This document shows, in pieces, positions 1,980 to 50,530 of a stretch of 64,000 nucleotides of DNA. This DNA is from Prasinococcaceae sp. CCMP 1430 (Eukaryota; Plantae; Prasinodermophyta). The first letter of the stretch is position 1. Each line of letters starts with the position of its first letter. The position numbers and the translations under genes are program-made. The stretch lies in assembly GCA_013416795.1 (NCBI GenBank), contig RQSC01000032.1:124001-188000 (forward strand). Direction: 5' to 3'. The notes beneath the pieces were generated by a model that was not told where the DNA came from, searched no databases, and worked only from the letters and a program-made list of their open reading frames with translations.

Positions 1980-2553
1980 AATCGCGGAGCGGAGCGCGCG
2001 GCACCCAAAAAAAGTGGAGAAGCCGGGTATCGATCCCGGTGCCTCGTCAATGCTAATGACGCGCTCTGCCATTTGAGCTACTCCCCCAGAAATTTCGATT
2101 TTCGCAAAATCTGGCGTTTACAAATGTGACTGCTGTGGCAGGCGCACGCGCGCGCCGCCAGCCTGCCCGCCTGCGCGCAGCGCCCGCCGCCGCCCGACGA
2201 CCCGGACTTCAGCGTGCAGTCGCGCGCCGCGCTGCGGCGGGCGCGAGAGGCATCGCGCGGCGCCTTCGTGCCCGTCGACGCGCTGCTGGATGCGTTCGCC
2301 ACCGAGTGCGCCGACGAGTTCCGCCGCGCCGGCGACGACGCGGCAGGCAAGCTGCGCAAGGCGATGGACGACGCAGGCGCGGGCGCTGAGGCCAACAGCG
2401 CGACCGCAGATCAGAGCCTCCAGGCGCTCCTGCAGTACGGGACCGACCTCACGGCCGCCGCCAGCCGTCTAGACCCAGTGATTGGGAGGGACGACGAGAT
2501 CAAGCGCACAATCAGGGTCTTGGCGAGGAAGAAGAAGAACAACGCGGTGCTCG

Positions 2554-43322: not shown

Positions 43323-43362
43323 NCACCACTCACACTGCCCTTCCCACCGCTCAGGCTCCGCC

Positions 43363-44929
43363 ATGACGGCCTCCGCCGCCGCCGTGGACGCCCCGACGAA
43401 GCCACCCCCTGAGCGCGTAGTATCACTGTACAACGCCGCCACAGAAAGCCTGTTCTTGGTCGGCGCCGGCAAGACGCTCGTCGCTCGCAGCCACGGTTGC
43501 GACCACCCAGCGGCGGCGCGGCTGCGGCCGGTGGTGAGCAAGGCCAAGCTCGACCTGAACGCCGGCGCTGCGGAGATCGACGCCGAGGTGCGCGTCTTGG
43601 CCGCGCGGCAGGAGCAGCTCTACAAGGTGGACTCCGCCGTGGTGGAGGCGGCCAACCCAGCGCTCGTCATCATGCAGGTACGCTCAGCCACCCCCTGCAT
43701 GCTTCTCTTGGAGCCGATGCCGTTTCCTGCATGCTTGACTGACCCTGCACCTCCGTCTTCTCCGCAACCAATCCATGCAGAACCAATGCAGTGTGTGCGC
43801 TGTCACGCCCGGCATTGTCGATACCGACGCGCCAATGCTCGTGCTCAGGCCGAAGACCTTGGAGGGCGTGCTGGACGACGTGGAGCGCGTGGCGGCAGCA
43901 GTGGGCGCCCCAGCGCGCGGGGCAAAGCTGCGCAAGCGACTTGACCGTCGGCTGGCAGAGGTGCGCGCGGACGTGGCAGAGGTGGCGCGGGGCGTGGCGA
44001 TGAAACCGAGGGTCGCGCTCCTTGAGTGGTGCGCGCCGATCATGGGCTGCGCCGACTGGCTTCCCGAGATCGTGGAGCTGGCCGGGGGCGTGCCCGTGCA
44101 CGCTGCGGTTGACGGCAAGACGCCAACGCTGTGGGGCGGCGTGGAGGAGCTGCTGTCCACGCCTCTGGACGCGATTGTACTTGCGCTCTGTGGCTTCGAC
44201 GCATCGCGCGTGGCAAGGGAGCTGCGCCGCTGCCCAGAGCTGCTCGCAGCGCTGCGCGGCCTCGAAGCTAGCGGCGACACTGGCGTGTGGGTGACGGACG
44301 GTAGCAGCCTCTTCAACCGCAGCGGGCCGCGGGTGGTGGAGTCCGCGGAGGTGCTCGCGGAGGCACTCCACAACGGGCTGCTCGGGCACTACGGCCACGC
44401 CGGCACACCCTACCTCCTCTCGCTCGAGGAGACGCTCGCGCTGTATCCGCCGGAGGACGGCACGGACGTCCCTAGCGCAGCCGCTGCTGCTGACCCCACC
44501 CCCGCCCGCGCTGCCGCCGTCGCTGGCTCGGCCGTCGGCGTCGAGAGAGAGAAGGCGCCATCGCCGCCAAAGGGGAAAGAGGCTGCGCTGGAAGTTGTGC
44601 GAGCACAGCTCGCGTGCCTGCGGGTGGGTGGCGACGCCGGTGTGGAGGCAGCGTTCGCGCTTTGCAGCGCGGGGAACCAGGAGCGCCTGGGTGGCCCTGC
44701 GCAATTCGGCGCCGTCCTGCGTGGGCACTCCACCTTCGCTGCTCTGCTCGGCCCAGAGGCGGGGGAGGCAGAGGTGCTTGGAGCTACCATCACCGCCGGC
44801 TGCTCAGAAGTGTCCGTGCTGCTCGAGGTGGGCGATGGCGACCGGCATAGCCTGCTCTGGACGCTCGAGCGCGACGCTGCAGCGGGTGGCGGGTGGCGCA
44901 CCGCCGGCGTGGCTGAGGACTGCTCGTGA
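43363..44929 (+). CDS. BtuF/TroA-like (cobalamin/metal-chelate) binding protein fused to a DUF4864-like domain; intron 43678-43780
   Basis: RVVSLYNAATE, RSHGCDHP, MQ|NQCSVCAV, PRVALLEW, WLPEIVELAGG, VTDGSSLFNRSGPRVVESAEVLA; C-terminal VVRAQL...AAFALCSAG...F. Confidence 0.8.
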
Positions 44930-44981
44930 TAGCGTTAATTAGAACTTTAGGTCAAGGTGACCCTAAACCGCTTTTTTTGGT

Positions 44982-47672
44982 ATGGTTGCGGTTGAGGGTC
45001 CAGTGAATTCTCGCGACCACGCGAGCCGTCGGCTTGTCCGTGCGCGGCCACACTGCGCGGTGCGCGCGCGGCAGCAGCACGTGAGCCTGGCGGACGAGTA
45101 CTTCTGCTCGGCAGACGCGGGCGAGGCGTTGTGGGCGCTTGGCGAGGCCGTCGCCGAGGCAGAAGCGCTCGCGGGCGAAGCGGACTGGGTCATTGTGCGG
45201 CTCTTTGTGAAGCGGCTCATCACACTGGCACTCGACCGTGGAGCACGCGAGCGCGAGATGGCCGCCTGCCTGCTGGCGGCGCTGCGTGGCGAGGGCGTGC
45301 GCGCGTCCGAGGTGGAGGCGGGCCTCGCTCTGTTGCTGGACTCGCTGGACGATCTCGCGCTTGACGTGCCCGACGCGCCCGGCCAGCTGACGCTCTTCCT
45401 CGCGCGCGCGGTGCTGGATGATGCCGCGAGTCGCGGCTTCGTGGACGAGCGCGCCTGCGGGGACAGCAGCGCCGCTGCGGCGGCGCGCGCCGCCCGCTCG
45501 CTGCTGCGGGCGCCGGGTGGGGCCGCGCGCGTCCGCGGCGCCTGGGGGGGCAGGGACGGCAGCTCGGTCGAGGCGAGCAAGGCCGTGATGGACTCGCTGC
45601 TCGAGGAATACGTGAGCAGCCTCGACCGCGCTGAGGCGGAGCGCCGACTGCGCGCGCTGGCGATGCCCTTCTACCACCACGAGTTCGTCAAGCGCGCGCT
45701 GTACATGGCCATCACGTACGCCGAGCGGCGGCCTGCGCTGGTGGACCTGCTCGCCGGCTTGTGCGGGTCGGGCTGCGTGAGCGCCAGCCAGATGGCGGCG
45801 GGTTTCGAGCGAACCGTTGAGAGGCTGCCCGACCTACGCCTGGACGTGCCCGACGCGCGCGCGAGCCTGGCGCTGCTGGCTGCGGAGCTGCGCGCCGCAC
45901 GGCTGCTGCCGGCCAGGCTGTCTGCCTGGGCGATGCTCCAGCAGCGCAAGACGGGGAGTGGCTCGCTCCGACTCGGGAGCGAGTCGTGCCTGGGCGCCCT
46001 CGCCGCCGGCGCCGGCGGCACGGAAGGTGACGCGGGGGGAGGCGGGGGAGGCGACGTGAGCGCGGACGGCGGGGACGGCTGGCACGGGGGCATGGCGCGT
46101 GTGCGGCCCATGTGGTCGGGCCTGCGCGCGCCCACGGTCAGCGCCAGCCGAGCGAGTGGCGGCAGCGGCGTGGAGCGCAAGGGTGACGCGGCGCCTTTCC
46201 CCGCCCCCGTGCTCTCCCTGCGCGGAAGGGCGCACTTCGCGTCGTCCCCGAATCTGTGCTCGCTGGACACCACCGAGCTCGTCAAGCCCGAGTGCCGCGC
46301 GCGGTCCTATCTCAACTTCTTCGACGAGTACGAGCTGGGCGCCTTCCTCGGCTCTGGCGGGTTCGCGGCCGTGTATCGCTGCACGCACAAGCGGACGGGC
46401 GCGCGCCGAGCGGTCAAGGTGGTCCGCGTGTCCGCGAGCGACGACGCCGGCGAAACGGGAGACGTCGCGGCCCGCGAGAGCGAGATGGCGCTGCAGGAGG
46501 TGATGAACGAGCTCGCGTTTTTGTCGACGCTGGGAGACCATCCGTCGGTGGTGAAGGTGCACCAGTACTTCCTGGACGAATCCACGATGCTCTGTCACAT
46601 CGTGATGGACCTCCTCGAGGGCGGCGAGCTGATGGAGGCGCTGGAAAGCGTGGGTTCCTACACGGAGGACAGCGTGCGCCTGCTCATGCGGCGGCTCTTC
46701 GAAGCGGTCCAGCACCTGCATTTCCACAACTGCGTGCACAGAGACCTGAAGATGGAAAACCTCATGCTCGCACGCGCGAACGACCTGGGCTCGTTGACTT
46801 TGGTGGACTTCGGCCTGGCGAAGACGATGCACGCGCGCGCGCGCGAGCGCGAGCAGTGCGGCACGGCGTGGTACATGAGCCCCGAGCTGCTGCTGGGCGT
46901 GCCATACGGCCGCGCCGTGGATTGCTGGGCGTGCGGCGTGATAATGTGGGCGCTCCTGACGGGCGCGTGGCCCTTCGGCGACGAGGAGGAGGACGAGGAC
47001 GCTGTGGCAGACGAGGTGGTGGAAGGAATGGACTTCGACGAAGCGTTCGCGCGCCCCGAGTGGCGCGACATCAGTGCCGAGGCGCAGGACCTTTTGCGCG
47101 GCCTGCTCAGCAGCAGCGTGCGCGCGCGGCTGACGGCCGTGGAGGCGCTGGAGCACGCGTGGTTCCTCGGTGCCGAGCGGGGCGGCGGCGCCATCGCCTC
47201 GGTAGAGCGCGAGGAGGGTGGCGGCGGGACCTCCCACCTCGCCGCACAGCTGAGCGAGACGCACGCCCGGCTGGAGGCCCTCTCTCGCGCGCGGAGGCAG
47301 GCGATGCCTCTGCGCTCCTTCGGCGCCGGCGAGCGCATCGCCGTCGCGGGCAGGACGTACACGGAGTGCCTGCTCGTCAAGAGCGGCGAGGCCACCATCC
47401 TTGACGAGGACGGTAGGGCGGTGGGCGCGCTCGGCGTGGGCGCGCTTATCGGCGAGGTGTGCGCCTCTCCGCGCTCGGGCGCGCCGGCGCCGCGCACTGT
47501 CGTCGCGGCCAGCCAGCTCACGTGCTCGGTCATCGCTGGCGAGGCGATGGAGCTCGCCGCCGCCCTCGACTACCGGCGCGCGCCGGACTTCCGTGCGGCG
47601 CTCGACGCGCGGCGCCGGGCGCTGCGCAAAGTCAAGGCGCAGGCTAAGGCCGGACCCTTGATAGGCGGCTAG
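44982..47672 (+). CDS. Double MA3 (PDCD4-like) + CaMK-type Ser/Thr kinase + cNMP-binding-like domain protein
   Basis: FVKRLITLALDR..REREMA..LL, LDDLALDVPDA, LLEEYV, PFYHHEFVKRAL, LPDLRLDVPDA; LGSGGFA, AVK, HRDLKMEN, DFGLA, GTAWYMSPE; SFGAGERI...LLVKSGEATI...GALIGE...RTVVA. Single uninterrupted ORF. Confidence 0.85.
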   Translation: MVAVEGPVNSRDHASRRLVRARPHCAVRARQQHVSLADEYFCSADAGEALWALGEAVAEAEALAGEADWVIVRLFVKRLITLALDRGAREREMAACLLAALRGEGVRASEVEAGLALLLDSLDDLALDVPDAPGQLTLFLARAVLDDAASRGFVDERACGDSSAAAAARAARSLLRAPGGAARVRGAWGGRDGSSVEASKAVMDSLLEEYVSSLDRAEAERRLRALAMPFYHHEFVKRALYMAITYAERRPALVDLLAGLCGSGCVSASQMAAGFERTVERLPDLRLDVPDARASLALLAAELRAARLLPARLSAWAMLQQRKTGSGSLRLGSESCLGALAAGAGGTEGDAGGGGGGDVSADGGDGWHGGMARVRPMWSGLRAPTVSASRASGGSGVERKGDAAPFPAPVLSLRGRAHFASSPNLCSLDTTELVKPECRARSYLNFFDEYELGAFLGSGGFAAVYRCTHKRTGARRAVKVVRVSASDDAGETGDVAARESEMALQEVMNELAFLSTLGDHPSVVKVHQYFLDESTMLCHIVMDLLEGGELMEALESVGSYTEDSVRLLMRRLFEAVQHLHFHNCVHRDLKMENLMLARANDLGSLTLVDFGLAKTMHARAREREQCGTAWYMSPELLLGVPYGRAVDCWACGVIMWALLTGAWPFGDEEEDEDAVADEVVEGMDFDEAFARPEWRDISAEAQDLLRGLLSSSVRARLTAVEALEHAWFLGAERGGGAIASVEREEGGGGTSHLAAQLSETHARLEALSRARRQAMPLRSFGAGERIAVAGRTYTECLLVKSGEATILDEDGRAVGALGVGALIGEVCASPRSGAPAPRTVVAASQLTCSVIAGEAMELAAALDYRRAPDFRAALDARRRALRKVKAQAKAGPLIGG

Positions 47673-47991
47673 CTAGAGAGCTAGCTAGAGAGCTGGAGAG
47701 GGCTGGAGAGAGAGAAAGTGTGTGTAGACTAGTTCTAGCTAGGATTAGCTCCAGTGGGAATTGGATTGTCATTCGAGAAATTCATCCTGCTGGGTCGTCG
47801 GCAGTGGGGAATCGGTGGTCGGTGGGGCGCAGATGCGGGCCATCATGCGGCCGATCGTTCGGCGACTGCGCGGGAGTGCGTCGTAGGCGCATGCCCTGCC
47901 ACGGTGGTAGGCAGGGCAGCGACGCGAGTGTGGACGCGCGCGTTGGGATTTGCGCGTGGGCGGTGGCCGTGCCGGTGCAGATGCTCGTGTC

Positions 47992-49998
47992 TCATCTGCA
48001 GTACAGCTTCCTGCAGCTCTCGCGAACGCATTTGGAACAGCGTTCGGGGGTTGGGTACCCCATCTCCACGCATTTCTTGACCCTGGCGAAGGGGCACGGC
48101 CCTGGCGTCTTGCCATTAGGGGTGGCTGGAGTAGGCGTGGGCGCGGGCGTCGGCTTAGACCTAGGCTGGGGCGGGTACCCGGCGGCCACGCAGTTCTTGA
48201 CCCTGACGAAGGGACATGGCCCGCTTTTTTTGGGCGGCGGCGTCGGCTTGGGCGTCGGCTTGGGCGTCGGCTTGGGCGTCGGCTTGGGCGTCGGCTTGGG
48301 CGTTGGCTTGGGCGTCGGCTTTGGCTTGCCGCCGCTGCAAGTCTGCTTTTTGCTGATGCACGTGGCAGCCTCGGCGAGCTGCGCGAGCTTCTTGGCGGTC
48401 GATGCGCAGGGCTTGTCGCTTCCGCCACCACGTGCACCCATCCAGTCGCCGCAAGTCGTATGCGTCAGGCCAAATATGTGCCCCGCCTCGTGGCCAGCCA
48501 CGCGATGCAGCTTGCTCGCCGCTCCGTACACTACGCCAACCTGAAACTTTTTGCCGCACAGCGTGCCCACATAGCCCAGCCCCGCCGGTCCTGATTTGCC
48601 GCGGTTGTTGGTCGCCAGCAGCGCGAGGTCGCCGCCGGAGACGCGCCTGTTGTCGCGGAAGTCCTGGATCATGCCCGAGCCGAGCGTACCCTTGTACGTG
48701 TTGCCAACGATGACCTGTCCGGCCTTGTGGACGATGCCGCTGTCTGCATACATGTTGTTCATGCCCGCCGTGGCGGCCAGCAGAGCGCCCACAGTGCCCT
48801 TGCCGAAAAGTTTCTCCATCGAGGCGTCCGCCTCCCAGTTGACAGTGCTCTCGTAGCAGCCCAGCTTGAGCATTTCAATGGGCGGCAGCGGGATGAGCTC
48901 GAGCACCTTGGCGTCGACGGGCGTCGCAAATACCTGCGGCACGCTGAGGGTGTCATTCGCAAACTCGAGCGGGCTTTTGTCGAGCACCACGGAGGTGGTG
49001 CCGTTCGTGCTATTGCCTGCAGCCCAGATGTTGGCATCGCTAAAATTTCTGCCTGCAGACGGTGGCTGGGAATCGCGCGCGACCTGCTCGTCGCGCGGGC
49101 TAGACAACATCACCCTTCTGGCGGGAACTCCTTCAGCGGCGCCGATAGGCAGGCTGACGTCGTCGCTTTCACCACTGCCGACGTCGATGTGTTCAAAGTG
49201 GTCCGCGCCAAGGGCTGCCGCGATGTAGATGACGTGTTCGACCTCATCGCTCGGACAAAAGCCCGGGATTGCCTCCCTTGCCGGCACAGGCTCGAGCACA
49301 AGCTCGAGGTTACTCAGACCGTCAGCCAGGAGACGCACCGCAGGATGTGCGAGGTGGAGCCATGCGTGCATGTGATCGATGCCCGAAGCATCGCTCAGCA
49401 CGAAGCGCCCCTTCCAGTCGCCGTCGTCGGTGCGCAGTGAGAAGAAGCGCACGGGGGGCGTCGCGTTGCGATGCGCGACCTTGCCAGTTTCAGCGTCCAT
49501 GTATATCGCTTCGAATCCGTCAGTGAGGTACTCGCGCGCGTCATCTTCTCGCATGCCGGCAATGAGCAGCGCGTGGTGCTCGCGCACATCATCATCTCCG
49601 GCGAGCACGACGTGCGCGCGAGGGCGTGGCAGGTACACGTGGAGCTCTCCCGCCCCCGAGAGCGACCAGGCGCTTCCGCTGCACGACCTCACGGCTTGGC
49701 CGCTCAGCACGGCCGCGTCGATGAGCGCACGTGTCATGGTGAGTGCGCGGCCATCGTCGTCGGCTGTTCCAGCCAAAAACGGCGTCACTCCGGAGGCGCG
49801 ACTCGCGGAGCGCGTATTGCTGACGAAGAGCAGCGGCCCACCGCCCTCCGCCATCAGAGCACCGTTGGCAGAGGCAGCCCGGCCCGCGAGCACACCCGGG
49901 ACCAAGGACGCGGTGAGCAAGGCCGCGCATGCCCCTGCCGCCGCACGTGCCTGCCGAGCCCCACCGCGCCCGCCACGCCCGCGTGCCCCTCGCGCCAT
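47992..49998 (-). CDS. Secreted reprolysin/M12B-like zinc metalloprotease with Pro-rich stalk and Cys-rich repeats
   Basis: Signal-like AAAGACAALLTASLVPGVLAG; GLGYVGTLC; HEAGHIFGLTH; Met-turn DWMG; (KPTP)7; two GPCPFxRVKxCVxxGYP repeats. Confidence 0.82.
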   Translation of the reverse strand: MARGARGRGGRGGARQARAAAGACAALLTASLVPGVLAGRAASANGALMAEGGGPLLFVSNTRSASRASGVTPFLAGTADDDGRALTMTRALIDAAVLSGQAVRSCSGSAWSLSGAGELHVYLPRPRAHVVLAGDDDVREHHALLIAGMREDDAREYLTDGFEAIYMDAETGKVAHRNATPPVRFFSLRTDDGDWKGRFVLSDASGIDHMHAWLHLAHPAVRLLADGLSNLELVLEPVPAREAIPGFCPSDEVEHVIYIAAALGADHFEHIDVGSGESDDVSLPIGAAEGVPARRVMLSSPRDEQVARDSQPPSAGRNFSDANIWAAGNSTNGTTSVVLDKSPLEFANDTLSVPQVFATPVDAKVLELIPLPPIEMLKLGCYESTVNWEADASMEKLFGKGTVGALLAATAGMNNMYADSGIVHKAGQVIVGNTYKGTLGSGMIQDFRDNRRVSGGDLALLATNNRGKSGPAGLGYVGTLCGKKFQVGVVYGAASKLHRVAGHEAGHIFGLTHTTCGDWMGARGGGSDKPCASTAKKLAQLAEAATCISKKQTCSGGKPKPTPKPTPKPTPKPTPKPTPKPTPKPTPPPKKSGPCPFVRVKNCVAAGYPPQPRSKPTPAPTPTPATPNGKTPGPCPFARVKKCVEMGYPTPERCSKCVRESCRKLYCR
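48239..48322 (-). repeat. 12-bp tandem repeat x7 encoding KPTP
   Basis: ggcgtcggcttg units on the + strand, inside the protease CDS. Confidence 0.95.
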
Positions 49999-50530
49999 CG
50001 CGAGCGCGACGCCGGTGGCGCCCGATCTCGTCCTCGCCGCTCGCCGCGTGCTCTCTGGCGCCCGCGCGCGGCCGGCGCTCGCGAAGGGGCGTTCCCTGCG
50101 CGCGCGCCAGGGTGGCACGCGAGAGCGCGCGTGTGGCCATGAGAACCATCAAAATGCATGCGCACGCGCGCGCGCGGCCGAACGGGCGCGCGCCCCCGAG
50201 AGCGCAGCCAGGCTGGTGGGCCACGGCTCCTGTTCGGCGGAGTGTGGGTTGTATGCTGCCATGAGGACCGTTACGCGGCCCCTTTCGGGGCCTTGTCTTT
50301 GCCAAACGGCGTCCACATCTTGTGCTCCCAACCTCGGGTACGACGCATCCCGCCCGATTTTGCGACTGGAATAAACCCTACAGAAAATCCGGATGAGGTT
50401 TCGGTTTGACCTCGCGCCGCCGGCGGCCCCAGAGTGCGCCACACCGCGCGCGCGCGCAGCAGCGGCGCCGGCGCACCCGTGGGGGGGTGGTGTGTGTGTG
50501 TGTGTGCGTGTGCGTGTGGCGGGTTGGAGN

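What the first reader, a model, noticed from the sequence alone, without database searches (positions are those of the whole stretch)
44982..47672. PDCD4-like double MA3 fused to a CaMK-type kinase and a cNMP-binding-like domain
Seen: one uninterrupted 896-aa ORF with two MA3 repeats (about 45075-45900), an intact kinase (about 46330-47165; G-loop, AVK, HRDLK, DFG, SPE) and a degenerate cyclic-nucleotide-binding-like domain (about 47300-47560). Known: MA3 domains of PDCD4 and plant MRF proteins bind eIF4A and are controlled in trans by TOR/S6K-type phosphorylation. I know no characterised protein combining these three modules. Inference: a self-contained sensor-kinase-translation-regulator that couples a second messenger to eIF4A activity.
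Basis: partly seen in the sequence, partly recalled or inferred. Interest (0 to 1): 0.8.

Follow-up and report, generated by a model that had tools for sequence, protein, structure and literature searches.

The report
PDCD4-like protein fused to a kinase
The green picoalga Prasinoderma coloniale and a few uncultured relatives have one gene that joins a PDCD4-type brake on protein synthesis to an intact protein kinase and a worn-down cyclic-nucleotide-sensor domain; no paper found describes this design, and the start of the gene as read in this window is an assembly artefact.

Summary
The 896-aa ORF exists and all three modules pass curated tests: two MA3 domains (113 bits; PDCD4 E 5e-32), a CaMK-like kinase (213 bits, catalytic motifs intact) and a cyclic-nucleotide-binding (CNB) fold (31 bits; the 50 listed fold matches are all CNB). 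The organism is Prasinoderma coloniale, and its annotation already holds an uncharacterised model (PRCOL_00004352).

The fusion is real. Seven proteins with MA3x2+kinase were found among 1.84 billion representatives. They form one kinase clade (100/98). The disordered linker is under purifying selection (dN/dS 0.31) and carries two invariant CaMK-type serine motifs.

Two corrections:
- **Start of the gene.** ATG 44982 and codons 1-34 are not genuine. The upstream gene's mRNA ends on that ATG, and no other data set crosses 45084. The reference model, a TARA scaffold and a Logan contig share another 5' exon that completes the first MA3 helix (true protein about 908 aa).
- **Sensor domain.** The family has lost the phosphate-binding arginine, so canonical cAMP/cGMP sensing is doubtful.

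The four PDCD4 acidic eIF4A-contact positions are kept. Most likely this is an eIF4A-binding module with its own kinase, switched through the linker. No RNA contig covers the gene. It is a new variant of known kinds.

The parts
44982..45084 (+). False N-terminus: ATG and codons 1-34 of the window ORF (plus the first base of codon 35). This is the 3' end of the upstream gene's mRNA and sequence beyond it, not part of the MA3-kinase gene.
   Evidence: RNA contigs X1/X2 end at 44986/44971. GC3 is 0.68 and dN/dS 1.5. There is no homology to L001, L007 or the N-terminus of P0223.
45084..45085 (.). Junction not supported by any other data set. It is a likely assembly join or deletion; a real strain rearrangement is less likely.
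   Evidence: X3 contigs end their match at 45083 and 45085 and run on for 6.5 and 6.2 kb of unlike sequence. The X6 contig, L001 and L007 all start matching at 45085.
45085..45560 (+). First MA3 domain (PDCD4 MA3-m equivalent), lacking the first half of its first helix in this window. It holds the acidic pair D-L-A-L-D aligned to PDCD4 E249/D253.
   Evidence: Pfam MA3. PDCD4 alignment over residues 161-441, E 1.6e-31. The conserved 'E-x-E/A-F-K' start is present in P0001/2/3 but absent here.
45588..45908 (+). Second MA3 domain (PDCD4 MA3-c equivalent), with D-L-R-L-D aligned to PDCD4 D414/D418.
   Evidence: Pfam best stretch at aa 203-309. PDCD4 alignment. pLDDT 85-97.
45942..46316 (+). Disordered linker (window aa 321-445) that is truly coding and carries conserved short motifs.
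   Evidence: dN/dS 0.31 and GC3 0.88. pLDDT below 50. Motifs are conserved in 7 family members.
45963..45992 (+). Motif A: x-x-R-[LM]-x-S-x-x-x-L (window S333 = P0001 S345). R at -3, the Ser and L at +4 are invariant in 7 of 7. This is a CaMKI/AMPK-type phospho-acceptor consensus, about 22 residues after MA3-c.
   Evidence: Family alignment. The consensus comparison rests on established knowledge. The positional analogy to PDCD4 Ser457 is from memory.
46113..46133 (+). Motif W-S-G-L-R-A-P, conserved in most family members; role unknown.
46227..46256 (+). Motif B: [R/K/H]-x-x-S-x-P-x-L (window S421 = P0001 S433). Ser and Pro are invariant. The -3 position is basic in 6 of 8 and His in the two Prasinoderma-type proteins. 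It resembles a 14-3-3 mode-1 site.
   Evidence: also present in P0090.
46329..47165 (+). CaMK-like Ser/Thr kinase domain with all catalytic motifs (K479, E510, HRDLK 586-590, N593, DFG 609-611, activation-loop CGT, SPE).
   Evidence: Pfam 212.7 bits. CaMKII/CDPK are the best PDB matches, E about 5e-45. The motifs are kept in all full-length members. pLDDT 85-97.
47235..47306 (+). Conserved helix between kinase and CNB ('H-A-R-L-E/D-A-L'), in the position of the CaMK regulatory segment.
   Evidence: helix 766-783 in P0001 numbering. dN/dS 0.23.
47313..47669 (+). CNB-fold domain plus C-terminal helix ('D-Y-R...F..A...R-R').
   Evidence: Pfam 31.3 bits. AF2 core pLDDT 82-93. All 50 listed Foldseek matches are CNB domains. 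dN/dS 0.25.
47451..47507 (+). Degenerate phosphate-binding cassette: G-E is kept, the loop is lengthened and proline-rich, and 'P-R-T-V-V-A' stands where 'P-R-x-A-[ST]-V-x-A' is canonical.
   Evidence: pLDDT below 50 at P0001 838-843.
47670..47672 (+). Stop codon.
   Evidence: The C-terminus is conserved in P0001 and P0225.

Best explanation
Window 45085-47672 is the larger part of a genuine single-exon gene of Prasinoderma coloniale. Its full product, about 908 aa, has five parts. First comes a PDCD4-type pair of MA3 domains. Then comes a disordered linker of about 125 residues. Then come a catalytically intact CaMK-like Ser/Thr kinase, a conserved helix, and a CNB-fold domain. Shown: the fusion is real, monophyletic, rare and under purifying selection along its whole length. 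The four acidic positions that PDCD4 uses to hold eIF4A are kept. The kinase motifs are intact. The linker carries two invariant serines in basophilic (CaMK-type) contexts. The CNB cassette has lost its conserved arginine. Inferred mechanism: the MA3 pair binds eIF4A as PDCD4 does. The tethered kinase phosphorylates the linker serines next to MA3-c, in cis or within an oligomer, doing itself what S6K, Akt and RSK do in trans to PDCD4. This changes eIF4A binding, partner recruitment (possibly 14-3-3 at motif B) or stability. The helix plus CNB-like domain were inherited from a cNMP-regulated kinase ancestor. They probably now act as an autoinhibitory or regulatory module that no longer reads cAMP or cGMP in the canonical way. 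The ATG at 44982 and the first 34 codons come from an unsupported sequence junction and are not part of the gene.
For: Domains. Real fusion: one ORF in each of seven MA3x2+Pkinase proteins (P0001/window, P0002, P0003, P0077, P0078, P0079, P0143); linker dN/dS 0.31 and GC3 0.88, like the domains; the reference annotation joins MA3 and kinase in one model. Single origin: the kinase clade with all fused members has 100/98 support. eIF4A surface: D, D, D, D at PDCD4 E249, D253, D414, D418, and E249A/D253A abolishes eIF4A binding in cells (PMC3089569). Linker sites: motifs A and B are invariant and lie in a region of pLDDT 25-40. PDCD4 is controlled by basophilic kinases at Ser67 and Ser457 (PMC6539695). 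Degenerate cassette. False start.
Against: No RNA contig covers the gene, so transcription and the absence of splicing are inferred only from conservation. No biochemical data exist for any member. Autophosphorylation of motifs A and B is a consensus-based guess, and in the two Prasinoderma-type proteins motif B has His, not Arg/Lys, at -3. AF2 gives no confident inter-domain arrangement (pTM 0.45). P. coloniale itself still has an Arg next to the cassette, so some ligand binding cannot be excluded. The equivalence of motif A to PDCD4 Ser457 is positional and rests on a sequence recalled from memory.
Confidence: 0.45

Rival explanations
1. Docking model. The MA3 pair is mainly a targeting module that brings the kinase to eIF4A/eIF4F. 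The kinase's important substrates are then translation factors (eIF4A, eIF4G, eIF4B, ribosomal proteins) in trans, rather than its own linker.
For: The eIF4A-contact acidic residues are kept. The kinase is intact and conserved. The eIF4G HEAT/MA3 scaffold is known to dock a kinase, Mnk (PMC3850090 background). This model can coexist with the best explanation.
Against: It does not explain why two serine motifs in the disordered linker are invariant across all seven members. No substrate data exist.
Confidence: 0.3
2. cAMP or cGMP binds the C-terminal CNB domain and thereby switches the kinase, coupling a cyclic-nucleotide signal to eIF4A activity.
For: A true CNB fold. The nearest unfused relatives have canonical cassettes and are probably cNMP-regulated. 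G-E is kept, and P. coloniale has an Arg-Thr at the end of the cassette.
Against: The phosphate-binding Arg is not conserved in the family: it is H in P0002, L in P0003 and W in P0078. In P. coloniale the cassette has the wrong spacing (5 or 12 residues between Glu and Arg instead of 8), four prolines and low model confidence. Sequence similarity to solved CNB domains is only E 0.08.
Confidence: 0.15
3. The junction at 45084 is real in the sequenced strain. A rearrangement has removed the promoter and first 47 codons, leaving a 5'-truncated and possibly dead copy.
For: The window sequence reads straight through with no N at the junction.
Against: The reference model from the same species is identical in the body and has the intact 5' exon. 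Contigs of the same organism (X3) do not cross the junction and continue into other sequence on both sides. A similar odd 34-nt bridge sits beside the single N at 43323, which suggests the assembly has such joins.
Confidence: 0.08
4. Artefact. A long stop-free frame in 70% GC DNA runs across two separate genes (MA3 and kinase-CNB) or across an intron.
For: High-GC DNA gives many long spurious ORFs here. No RNA contig covers the gene.
Against: The same single ORF occurs in seven divergent proteins down to 35% identity. The linker has conserved motifs, dN/dS 0.31 and coding-type GC3. All indels are in frame.
Confidence: 0.02

Closest known systems
PDCD4 (animals) and two-MA3 PDCD4 homologues of early-branching algae; plant MRF/ECIP1 four-MA3 proteins
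   Same: Tandem MA3-m/MA3-c pair aligning over human PDCD4 161-441 (E 1.6e-31). The inter-domain 'W-G-G' linker and all four acidic eIF4A-contact positions are kept. A basophilic Ser site lies just after MA3-c, as with PDCD4 Ser457.
   Different: No long N-terminal RNA-binding region and no Ser67/DSGxxS degron (about 45 residues only before MA3-m). It carries its own kinase and a CNB-fold domain, whereas PDCD4 and MRFs are phosphorylated in trans by S6K, Akt or RSK. The 2013 survey of algal PDCD4s reports no kinase fusion (PMC3850090).
CaMK-group kinases (CaMKI/II, CDPK)
   Same: Best sequence matches (E about 5e-45). All catalytic motifs are present, with a 'C-G-T' activation loop. A regulatory module follows the kinase directly, as the CaM-like domain does in CDPKs.
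   Different: The regulatory module is a helix plus a CNB fold, not a CaM-binding segment or EF hands. An acidic insert lies between strand beta-3 and helix alpha-C.
Green-algal CaMK-like kinases with a C-terminal CNB domain (e.g. Pterosperma MMETSP protein P0161; Atlas clusters auto-named 'cGMP-dependent protein kinase family protein')
   Same: Same kinase-helix-CNB-C-helix layout. They are the sister group in the kinase tree (96/88), and the 'D-Y-R...R-R' C-terminal helix is shared with P0090 and partly with P0120.
   Different: They lack MA3 domains and the linker motifs and keep a canonical R-T-A-S cassette. They too are uncharacterised.
PKA regulatory subunit / PKG
   Same: CNB fold. Weak sequence similarity to the PKA RI-alpha CNB-B domain.
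   Different: The kinase is CaMK-like, not AGC. The CNB is C-terminal and single. The cassette arginine is not conserved.

Membership tests
PDCD4/MRF (tandem-MA3 eIF4A-binding proteins) | Two (or four) tandem MA3 domains | tested here: met
   Pfam MA3, 2 stretches, 113.3 bits. phmmer to PDCD4 3eij/8xxl, E 5e-32 / 1.6e-31, over both domains.
PDCD4/MRF (tandem-MA3 eIF4A-binding proteins) | Acidic eIF4A-contact residues (human E249, D253, D414, D418) | tested here: met
   The aligned residues are D, D, D, D. Their role is documented in PMC3089569.
PDCD4/MRF (tandem-MA3 eIF4A-binding proteins) | N-terminal regulatory region with an S6K site and a beta-TrCP degron (animal PDCD4) | tested here: not met
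   Only about 45 residues precede MA3-m in P0001/P0002, and no DSGxxS motif is present. The degron is described in PMC6539695.
PDCD4/MRF (tandem-MA3 eIF4A-binding proteins) | Physical binding to eIF4A and inhibition of it | not testable with these tools
   Needs a pull-down or helicase assay.
CaMK-group protein kinases | Complete catalytic core (G-loop, VAIK Lys, alpha-C Glu, HRDLKxxN, DFG, APE) | tested here: met
   Pkinase 212.7 bits, full profile 1-263. The motifs are kept across members.
CaMK-group protein kinases | Closest relatives are CaMKs | tested here: met
   The top PDB matches are CaMKII, CDPK, CaMKI/IV, DCLK1 and CHK2.
CaMK-group protein kinases | Ca2+/calmodulin-binding regulatory segment or EF hands | not tested
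   No EF-hand family in Pfam. CaM binding of the post-kinase helix was not assessed.
cNMP-dependent kinases / functional CNB domains | CNB beta-sandwich fold | tested here: met
   Pfam cNMP_binding 31.3 bits against a cut-off of 27.5. All 50 listed Foldseek matches are CNB domains, E about 1e-6.
cNMP-dependent kinases / functional CNB domains | Phosphate-binding cassette G-E-x8-R-[ST/A]-A with an invariant Arg | tested here: not met
   G-E is kept. The Arg is shifted in P. coloniale and replaced by H, L or W in other members, while unfused relatives have R-T-A-S.
cNMP-dependent kinases / functional CNB domains | AGC-type kinase with N-terminal CNB domains (PKG), or a separate R subunit (PKA) | tested here: not met
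   The kinase is CaMK-like and the single CNB is C-terminal.
Green-algal CaMK-like kinase + C-terminal CNB family | Kinase-helix-CNB layout and phylogenetic affinity | tested here: met
   Alignment. In the tree, the fused clade (100/98) is sister to P0120 (96/88). The Atlas neighbours are all Pkinase+cNMP_binding clusters.

The most novel reading that the evidence does not exclude
A single-polypeptide translational switch. A PDCD4-type eIF4A inhibitor carries its own CaMK-like kinase and turns itself on or off by phosphorylating two conserved linker serines. One of these recruits 14-3-3. The degenerate CNB domain senses a ligand other than cAMP/cGMP, or acts as a ligand-free autoinhibitor. It may be the only PDCD4-type protein in Prasinoderma, since no stand-alone homologue was found.
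Probability: 0.25. Interest if true: 0.7.

Novelty: new variant of a known kind. Interest (0 to 1): 0.55.

Why it matters
PDCD4 and the plant MRFs are brakes on eIF4A that are released by growth-signal kinases acting in trans. A natural fusion of such a brake to a kinase is a 'Rosetta-stone' hint that a CaMK-type kinase and PDCD4 work together. It comes from the earliest-branching phylum of green plants. It offers a compact system for asking how phosphorylation next to MA3-c changes eIF4A binding. It also shows a CNB domain that keeps its fold but not its canonical ligand-binding residues after a fusion event. On the practical side, the window sequence has an unsupported junction inside this gene, and the reference model truncates the CNB domain, so both need correcting.

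Tried and rejected
- **Missing 5' exon.** I looked for it elsewhere in the 64-kb window by tblastn with the N-termini of P0001, P0002 and P0003, and by blastn with L001. Nothing was found.
- **Synteny.** tblastx of the L002 flanks against the window and L001 gave only low-complexity noise.
- **RNA support.** The two transcript-like runs (X1, X2) cover the upstream gene well, but touch the MA3-kinase gene only with 20-nt low-complexity matches. Transcription is therefore neither shown nor excluded.
- **Intron idea.** The '...GTGAG|CC' at 45084 could be a splice acceptor. I rejected this because no upstream exon exists in the window and DNA contigs themselves diverge there.
- **CNB by sequence.** Matching the CNB domain to PDB chains by sequence gave only E 0.08. 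The fold search was needed to settle it.
- **Earlier scan notes.** A word search for MA3, PDCD4, eIF4A and MRF returned nothing.
- **Stand-alone PDCD4.** The search found none from P. coloniale. It depends on shared words, so this is weak negative evidence.
- **Promoter/terminator scan.** It is irrelevant for a eukaryote, and it came back empty.
- **Full-length AF2.** It gave no usable inter-domain geometry (pTM 0.45).
Full report
**Observation.** The window holds an uninterrupted + strand ORF at 44982-47672 (896 aa) in about 70% GC DNA.
- MA3 in two stretches (113.3 bits; cut-off 23.2)
- Pkinase over the full profile at aa 450-728 (212.7 bits)
- cNMP_binding at aa 778-856 (31.3 bits; cut-off 27.5)

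The best solved relatives of the kinase are CaMKII, CDPKs, CaMKI/IV and DCLK1 (E about 5e-45).

**Organism and prior annotation.** The 90% cluster of the nearest protein (P0001, from a TARA metagenome scaffold) contains EukProt entry EP00793 of Prasinoderma coloniale, gene model PRCOL_00004352-RA (P0223, 882 aa). The body of that model is identical to the window ORF. The genome paper reports 69.8% GC and 22 chromosomes and never mentions MA3, PDCD4 or cyclic nucleotides (PMC7455551). The gene is therefore already in a public annotation, but I found no description of it. Full-text searches for the domain combination gave nothing relevant. The dedicated survey of PDCD4 evolution in plants and algae reports only plain two-MA3 or four-MA3 forms (PMC3850090).

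**The start of the ORF is not genuine.** Several independent lines agree:
- The TARA scaffold L001 matches the window at 97.7% from 45085 to 50227 and not at all upstream.
- An independent Logan contig, L007, matches L001 end to end at 99% but matches the window only from 45085.
- P0001, P0225 and the reference model P0223 share an N-terminal segment ending '...AERAFKKAASR' before 'LADEYF'. P0002 and P0003 have the homologous 'E-x-E-F-K' start of the first MA3 helix. The window lacks it.
- Codons 1-34 have GC3 0.68 against 0.88-0.90 in the rest of the ORF, and dN/dS 1.5 against L002.
- Transcript contigs of the upstream gene (runs X1 and X2, which show its 103-nt GT..AG intron at 43671-43773) end at 44986 and 44971, on the proposed ATG.
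- In X3, which holds DNA contigs of the same organism, one contig covers 43353-45083 and another covers 45085-48268. Each continues for more than 6 kb into sequence unlike the window. A contig of X6 also stops at 45085.
- There is no N at the junction.

The most economical reading is an assembly join or deletion at 45084. A real rearrangement in the sequenced strain is a minor alternative. The true protein is about 908-909 aa, and window residue n corresponds to P0001 residue n+12.

The reference model has a different problem. It splices out of the ORF inside the CNB domain and ends early. The unspliced reading is conserved to the C-terminus in P0002, P0003 and P0078 and is under purifying selection.

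**The fusion is real.** A word-indexed search of 5.8 billion proteins found only three proteins with MA3 plus Pkinase. An exhaustive HMMER pass over 1.84 billion representatives, followed by Pfam, raised this to seven:
- P0001 (which stands for the window's own protein)
- P0002 (68% identity)
- P0003
- P0077
- P0078
- P0079 and P0143, both truncated

All the others come from metagenomes or unlabelled runs. Each is a single ORF.

Against L002, dN/dS is 0.26 for the MA3 pair, 0.31 for the linker, 0.22 for the kinase, 0.23 for the junction and 0.25 for the CNB domain. GC3 is 0.88-0.90 throughout. This rules out an intron or an intergenic read-through.

A maximum-likelihood tree of kinase domains puts all seven fused proteins, with a few short fragments, in one clade (100/98). 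That clade is sister to an unfused kinase-CNB protein (96/88), which is consistent with one fusion event. The ESM Atlas neighbours are all Pkinase+cNMP_binding clusters, mostly labelled Chlorophyta.

**MA3 module.** The N-terminal 345 residues of P0001 align with human PDCD4 residues 161-441, across both MA3 domains (E 1.6e-31). Counting along the full-length chain, the residues opposite E249, D253, D414 and D418 are D, D, D and D. These acidic patches form the eIF4A interface, and E249A/D253A abolishes eIF4A binding in cells (PMC3089569). eIF4A binding is thus a well-founded inference, but it is not shown. The long N-terminal region of animal PDCD4, with its S6K site and beta-TrCP degron (PMC6539695), is absent.

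**Linker.** AlphaFold2 with a 49-sequence alignment models the MA3 pair (pLDDT 85-97), the kinase (85-97) and the CNB core (77-90) confidently. It leaves P0001 residues 332-452 disordered (pLDDT 25-40) and gives pTM 0.45. Within this disordered stretch the seven-member alignment shows two motifs:
- **Motif A** is x-x-R-[LM]-x-S-x-x-x-L. R at -3, the Ser and L at +4 are invariant, and -5 is hydrophobic in four of seven. It lies about 22 residues after MA3-c.
- **Motif B** is [R/K/H]-x-x-S-x-P-x-L. The Ser and Pro are invariant, and -3 is basic in six of eight, counting P0090.

From established knowledge, motif A is the CaMKI/AMPK-type consensus (Hyd-x-Arg-x-x-Ser-x-x-x-Hyd), and motif B also fits the 14-3-3 mode-1 pattern. 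From memory of the human sequence, PDCD4 Ser457 (R-F-V-S-E) lies 16 residues after the end of MA3-c. That is a positional parallel, not proven homology.

**Kinase.** The G-loop, K479, E510, HRDLK-x-x-N, DFG, the activation-loop C-G-T and SPE/APE are kept in all full-length members. The kinase is expected to be active.

**CNB-like module.** A model of the last 169 residues has a confident beta core (pLDDT 82-93). All 50 listed Foldseek matches are cyclic-nucleotide-binding domains: CNG/HCN channels, PKA-R, PKG and CRP. The ligand site, however, is degenerate. Unfused relatives end their cassette with R-T-A-S or R-R-x-A-D. The fused family has 'P-A-P-R-T-V-V-A' (P. coloniale), 'A-Q-H-T-V-V-A' (P0002), 'S-K-L-T-V-R-A' (P0003) and 'S-W-T-S-A-R-A' (P0078). 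In P. coloniale the Glu-to-Arg spacing is 5 or 12 residues instead of 8, the loop has four prolines, and its pLDDT is below 50. Canonical cAMP/cGMP binding is therefore unlikely for the family. It is not excluded for P. coloniale itself.

A conserved helix ('H-A-R-L-E/D-A-L') sits between the kinase and the CNB domain, where CaMKs have their regulatory segment.

**Mechanism.** The reading I commit to is as follows. The MA3 pair binds eIF4A. The tethered kinase phosphorylates the linker serines, doing in one polypeptide what S6K, Akt and RSK do to PDCD4 in trans. The helix plus CNB remnant gates the kinase. I put about 0.45 on this.

The main rival is that MA3 merely docks the kinase onto eIF4F for trans-phosphorylation (0.3).

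No stand-alone PDCD4 of P. coloniale was seen in two searches. That would make the fused protein the lineage's only PDCD4-type factor, but this is weak negative evidence.

**Limits.** No RNA contig lies on the gene. No member has been studied experimentally. The lineages of the metagenomic members are unknown.

**Verdict.** This is a genuine, rare and conserved domain fusion, built from known parts in an arrangement I found in no paper. It is a new variant of known kinds and of moderate interest.

Noticed in passing
window 43323-43357: A single N at 43323 is followed by a 34-nt stretch (43324-43357) that belongs to other, longer contigs and to another transcript in runs X1, X3 and X6. The real 5' end of the next gene's mRNA starts at about 43353. 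It looks like a second short-overlap assembly join, of the same kind as the one at 45084.
   Followed up: partly
window 43353-44986 (+): The upstream gene is RNA-supported: transcript contigs in two runs, a 103-nt GT..AG intron at 43671-43773, and a 3' end at about 44971-44986. Its second exon gives only a sub-threshold Peripla_BP_2 match (22.6 bits against a cut-off of 27.5). An earlier first-reader note calls it a BtuF-like protein fused to a DUF4864-like domain.
   Followed up: partly
window 47992-50118 (-); L001 1340-3400: A reprolysin-like (M12) metalloprotease with a Pro/Thr/Lys-rich repeat lies tail-to-tail downstream. In the TARA scaffold a paralogue, about 65% identical at the DNA level, lies upstream of the MA3-kinase gene in the segment that is missing from the window.
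   Followed up: partly
window 50227/50228; L001 9559/9560: Homology between the window and the TARA scaffold also ends abruptly at 50227, and a single N lies at 50530. This may be a second breakpoint or simply strain divergence. Not examined.
   Followed up: no
P0223 (reference gene model PRCOL_00004352-RA), equivalent to window ~47456: The published model leaves the ORF after '...GALIGE' through a predicted intron and ends 9 residues later, cutting the CNB domain in half. Conservation of the unspliced frame in relatives suggests this is a model error. Its N-terminal 60 residues also differ from the ORF start seen in L001 and L007.
   Followed up: partly
P0090 (586 aa, metagenomic): This member of the fused kinase clade has linker motif B and the 'K-P-E-x-R-A' pre-kinase segment but no MA3 domains. 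It is either a truncated gene call or a natural MA3-less paralogue.
   Followed up: no
window 2015-2087 (-): One tRNA gene (Rfam RF00005, 53.4 bits) is the only Rfam match at the gathering threshold in the window.
   Followed up: no
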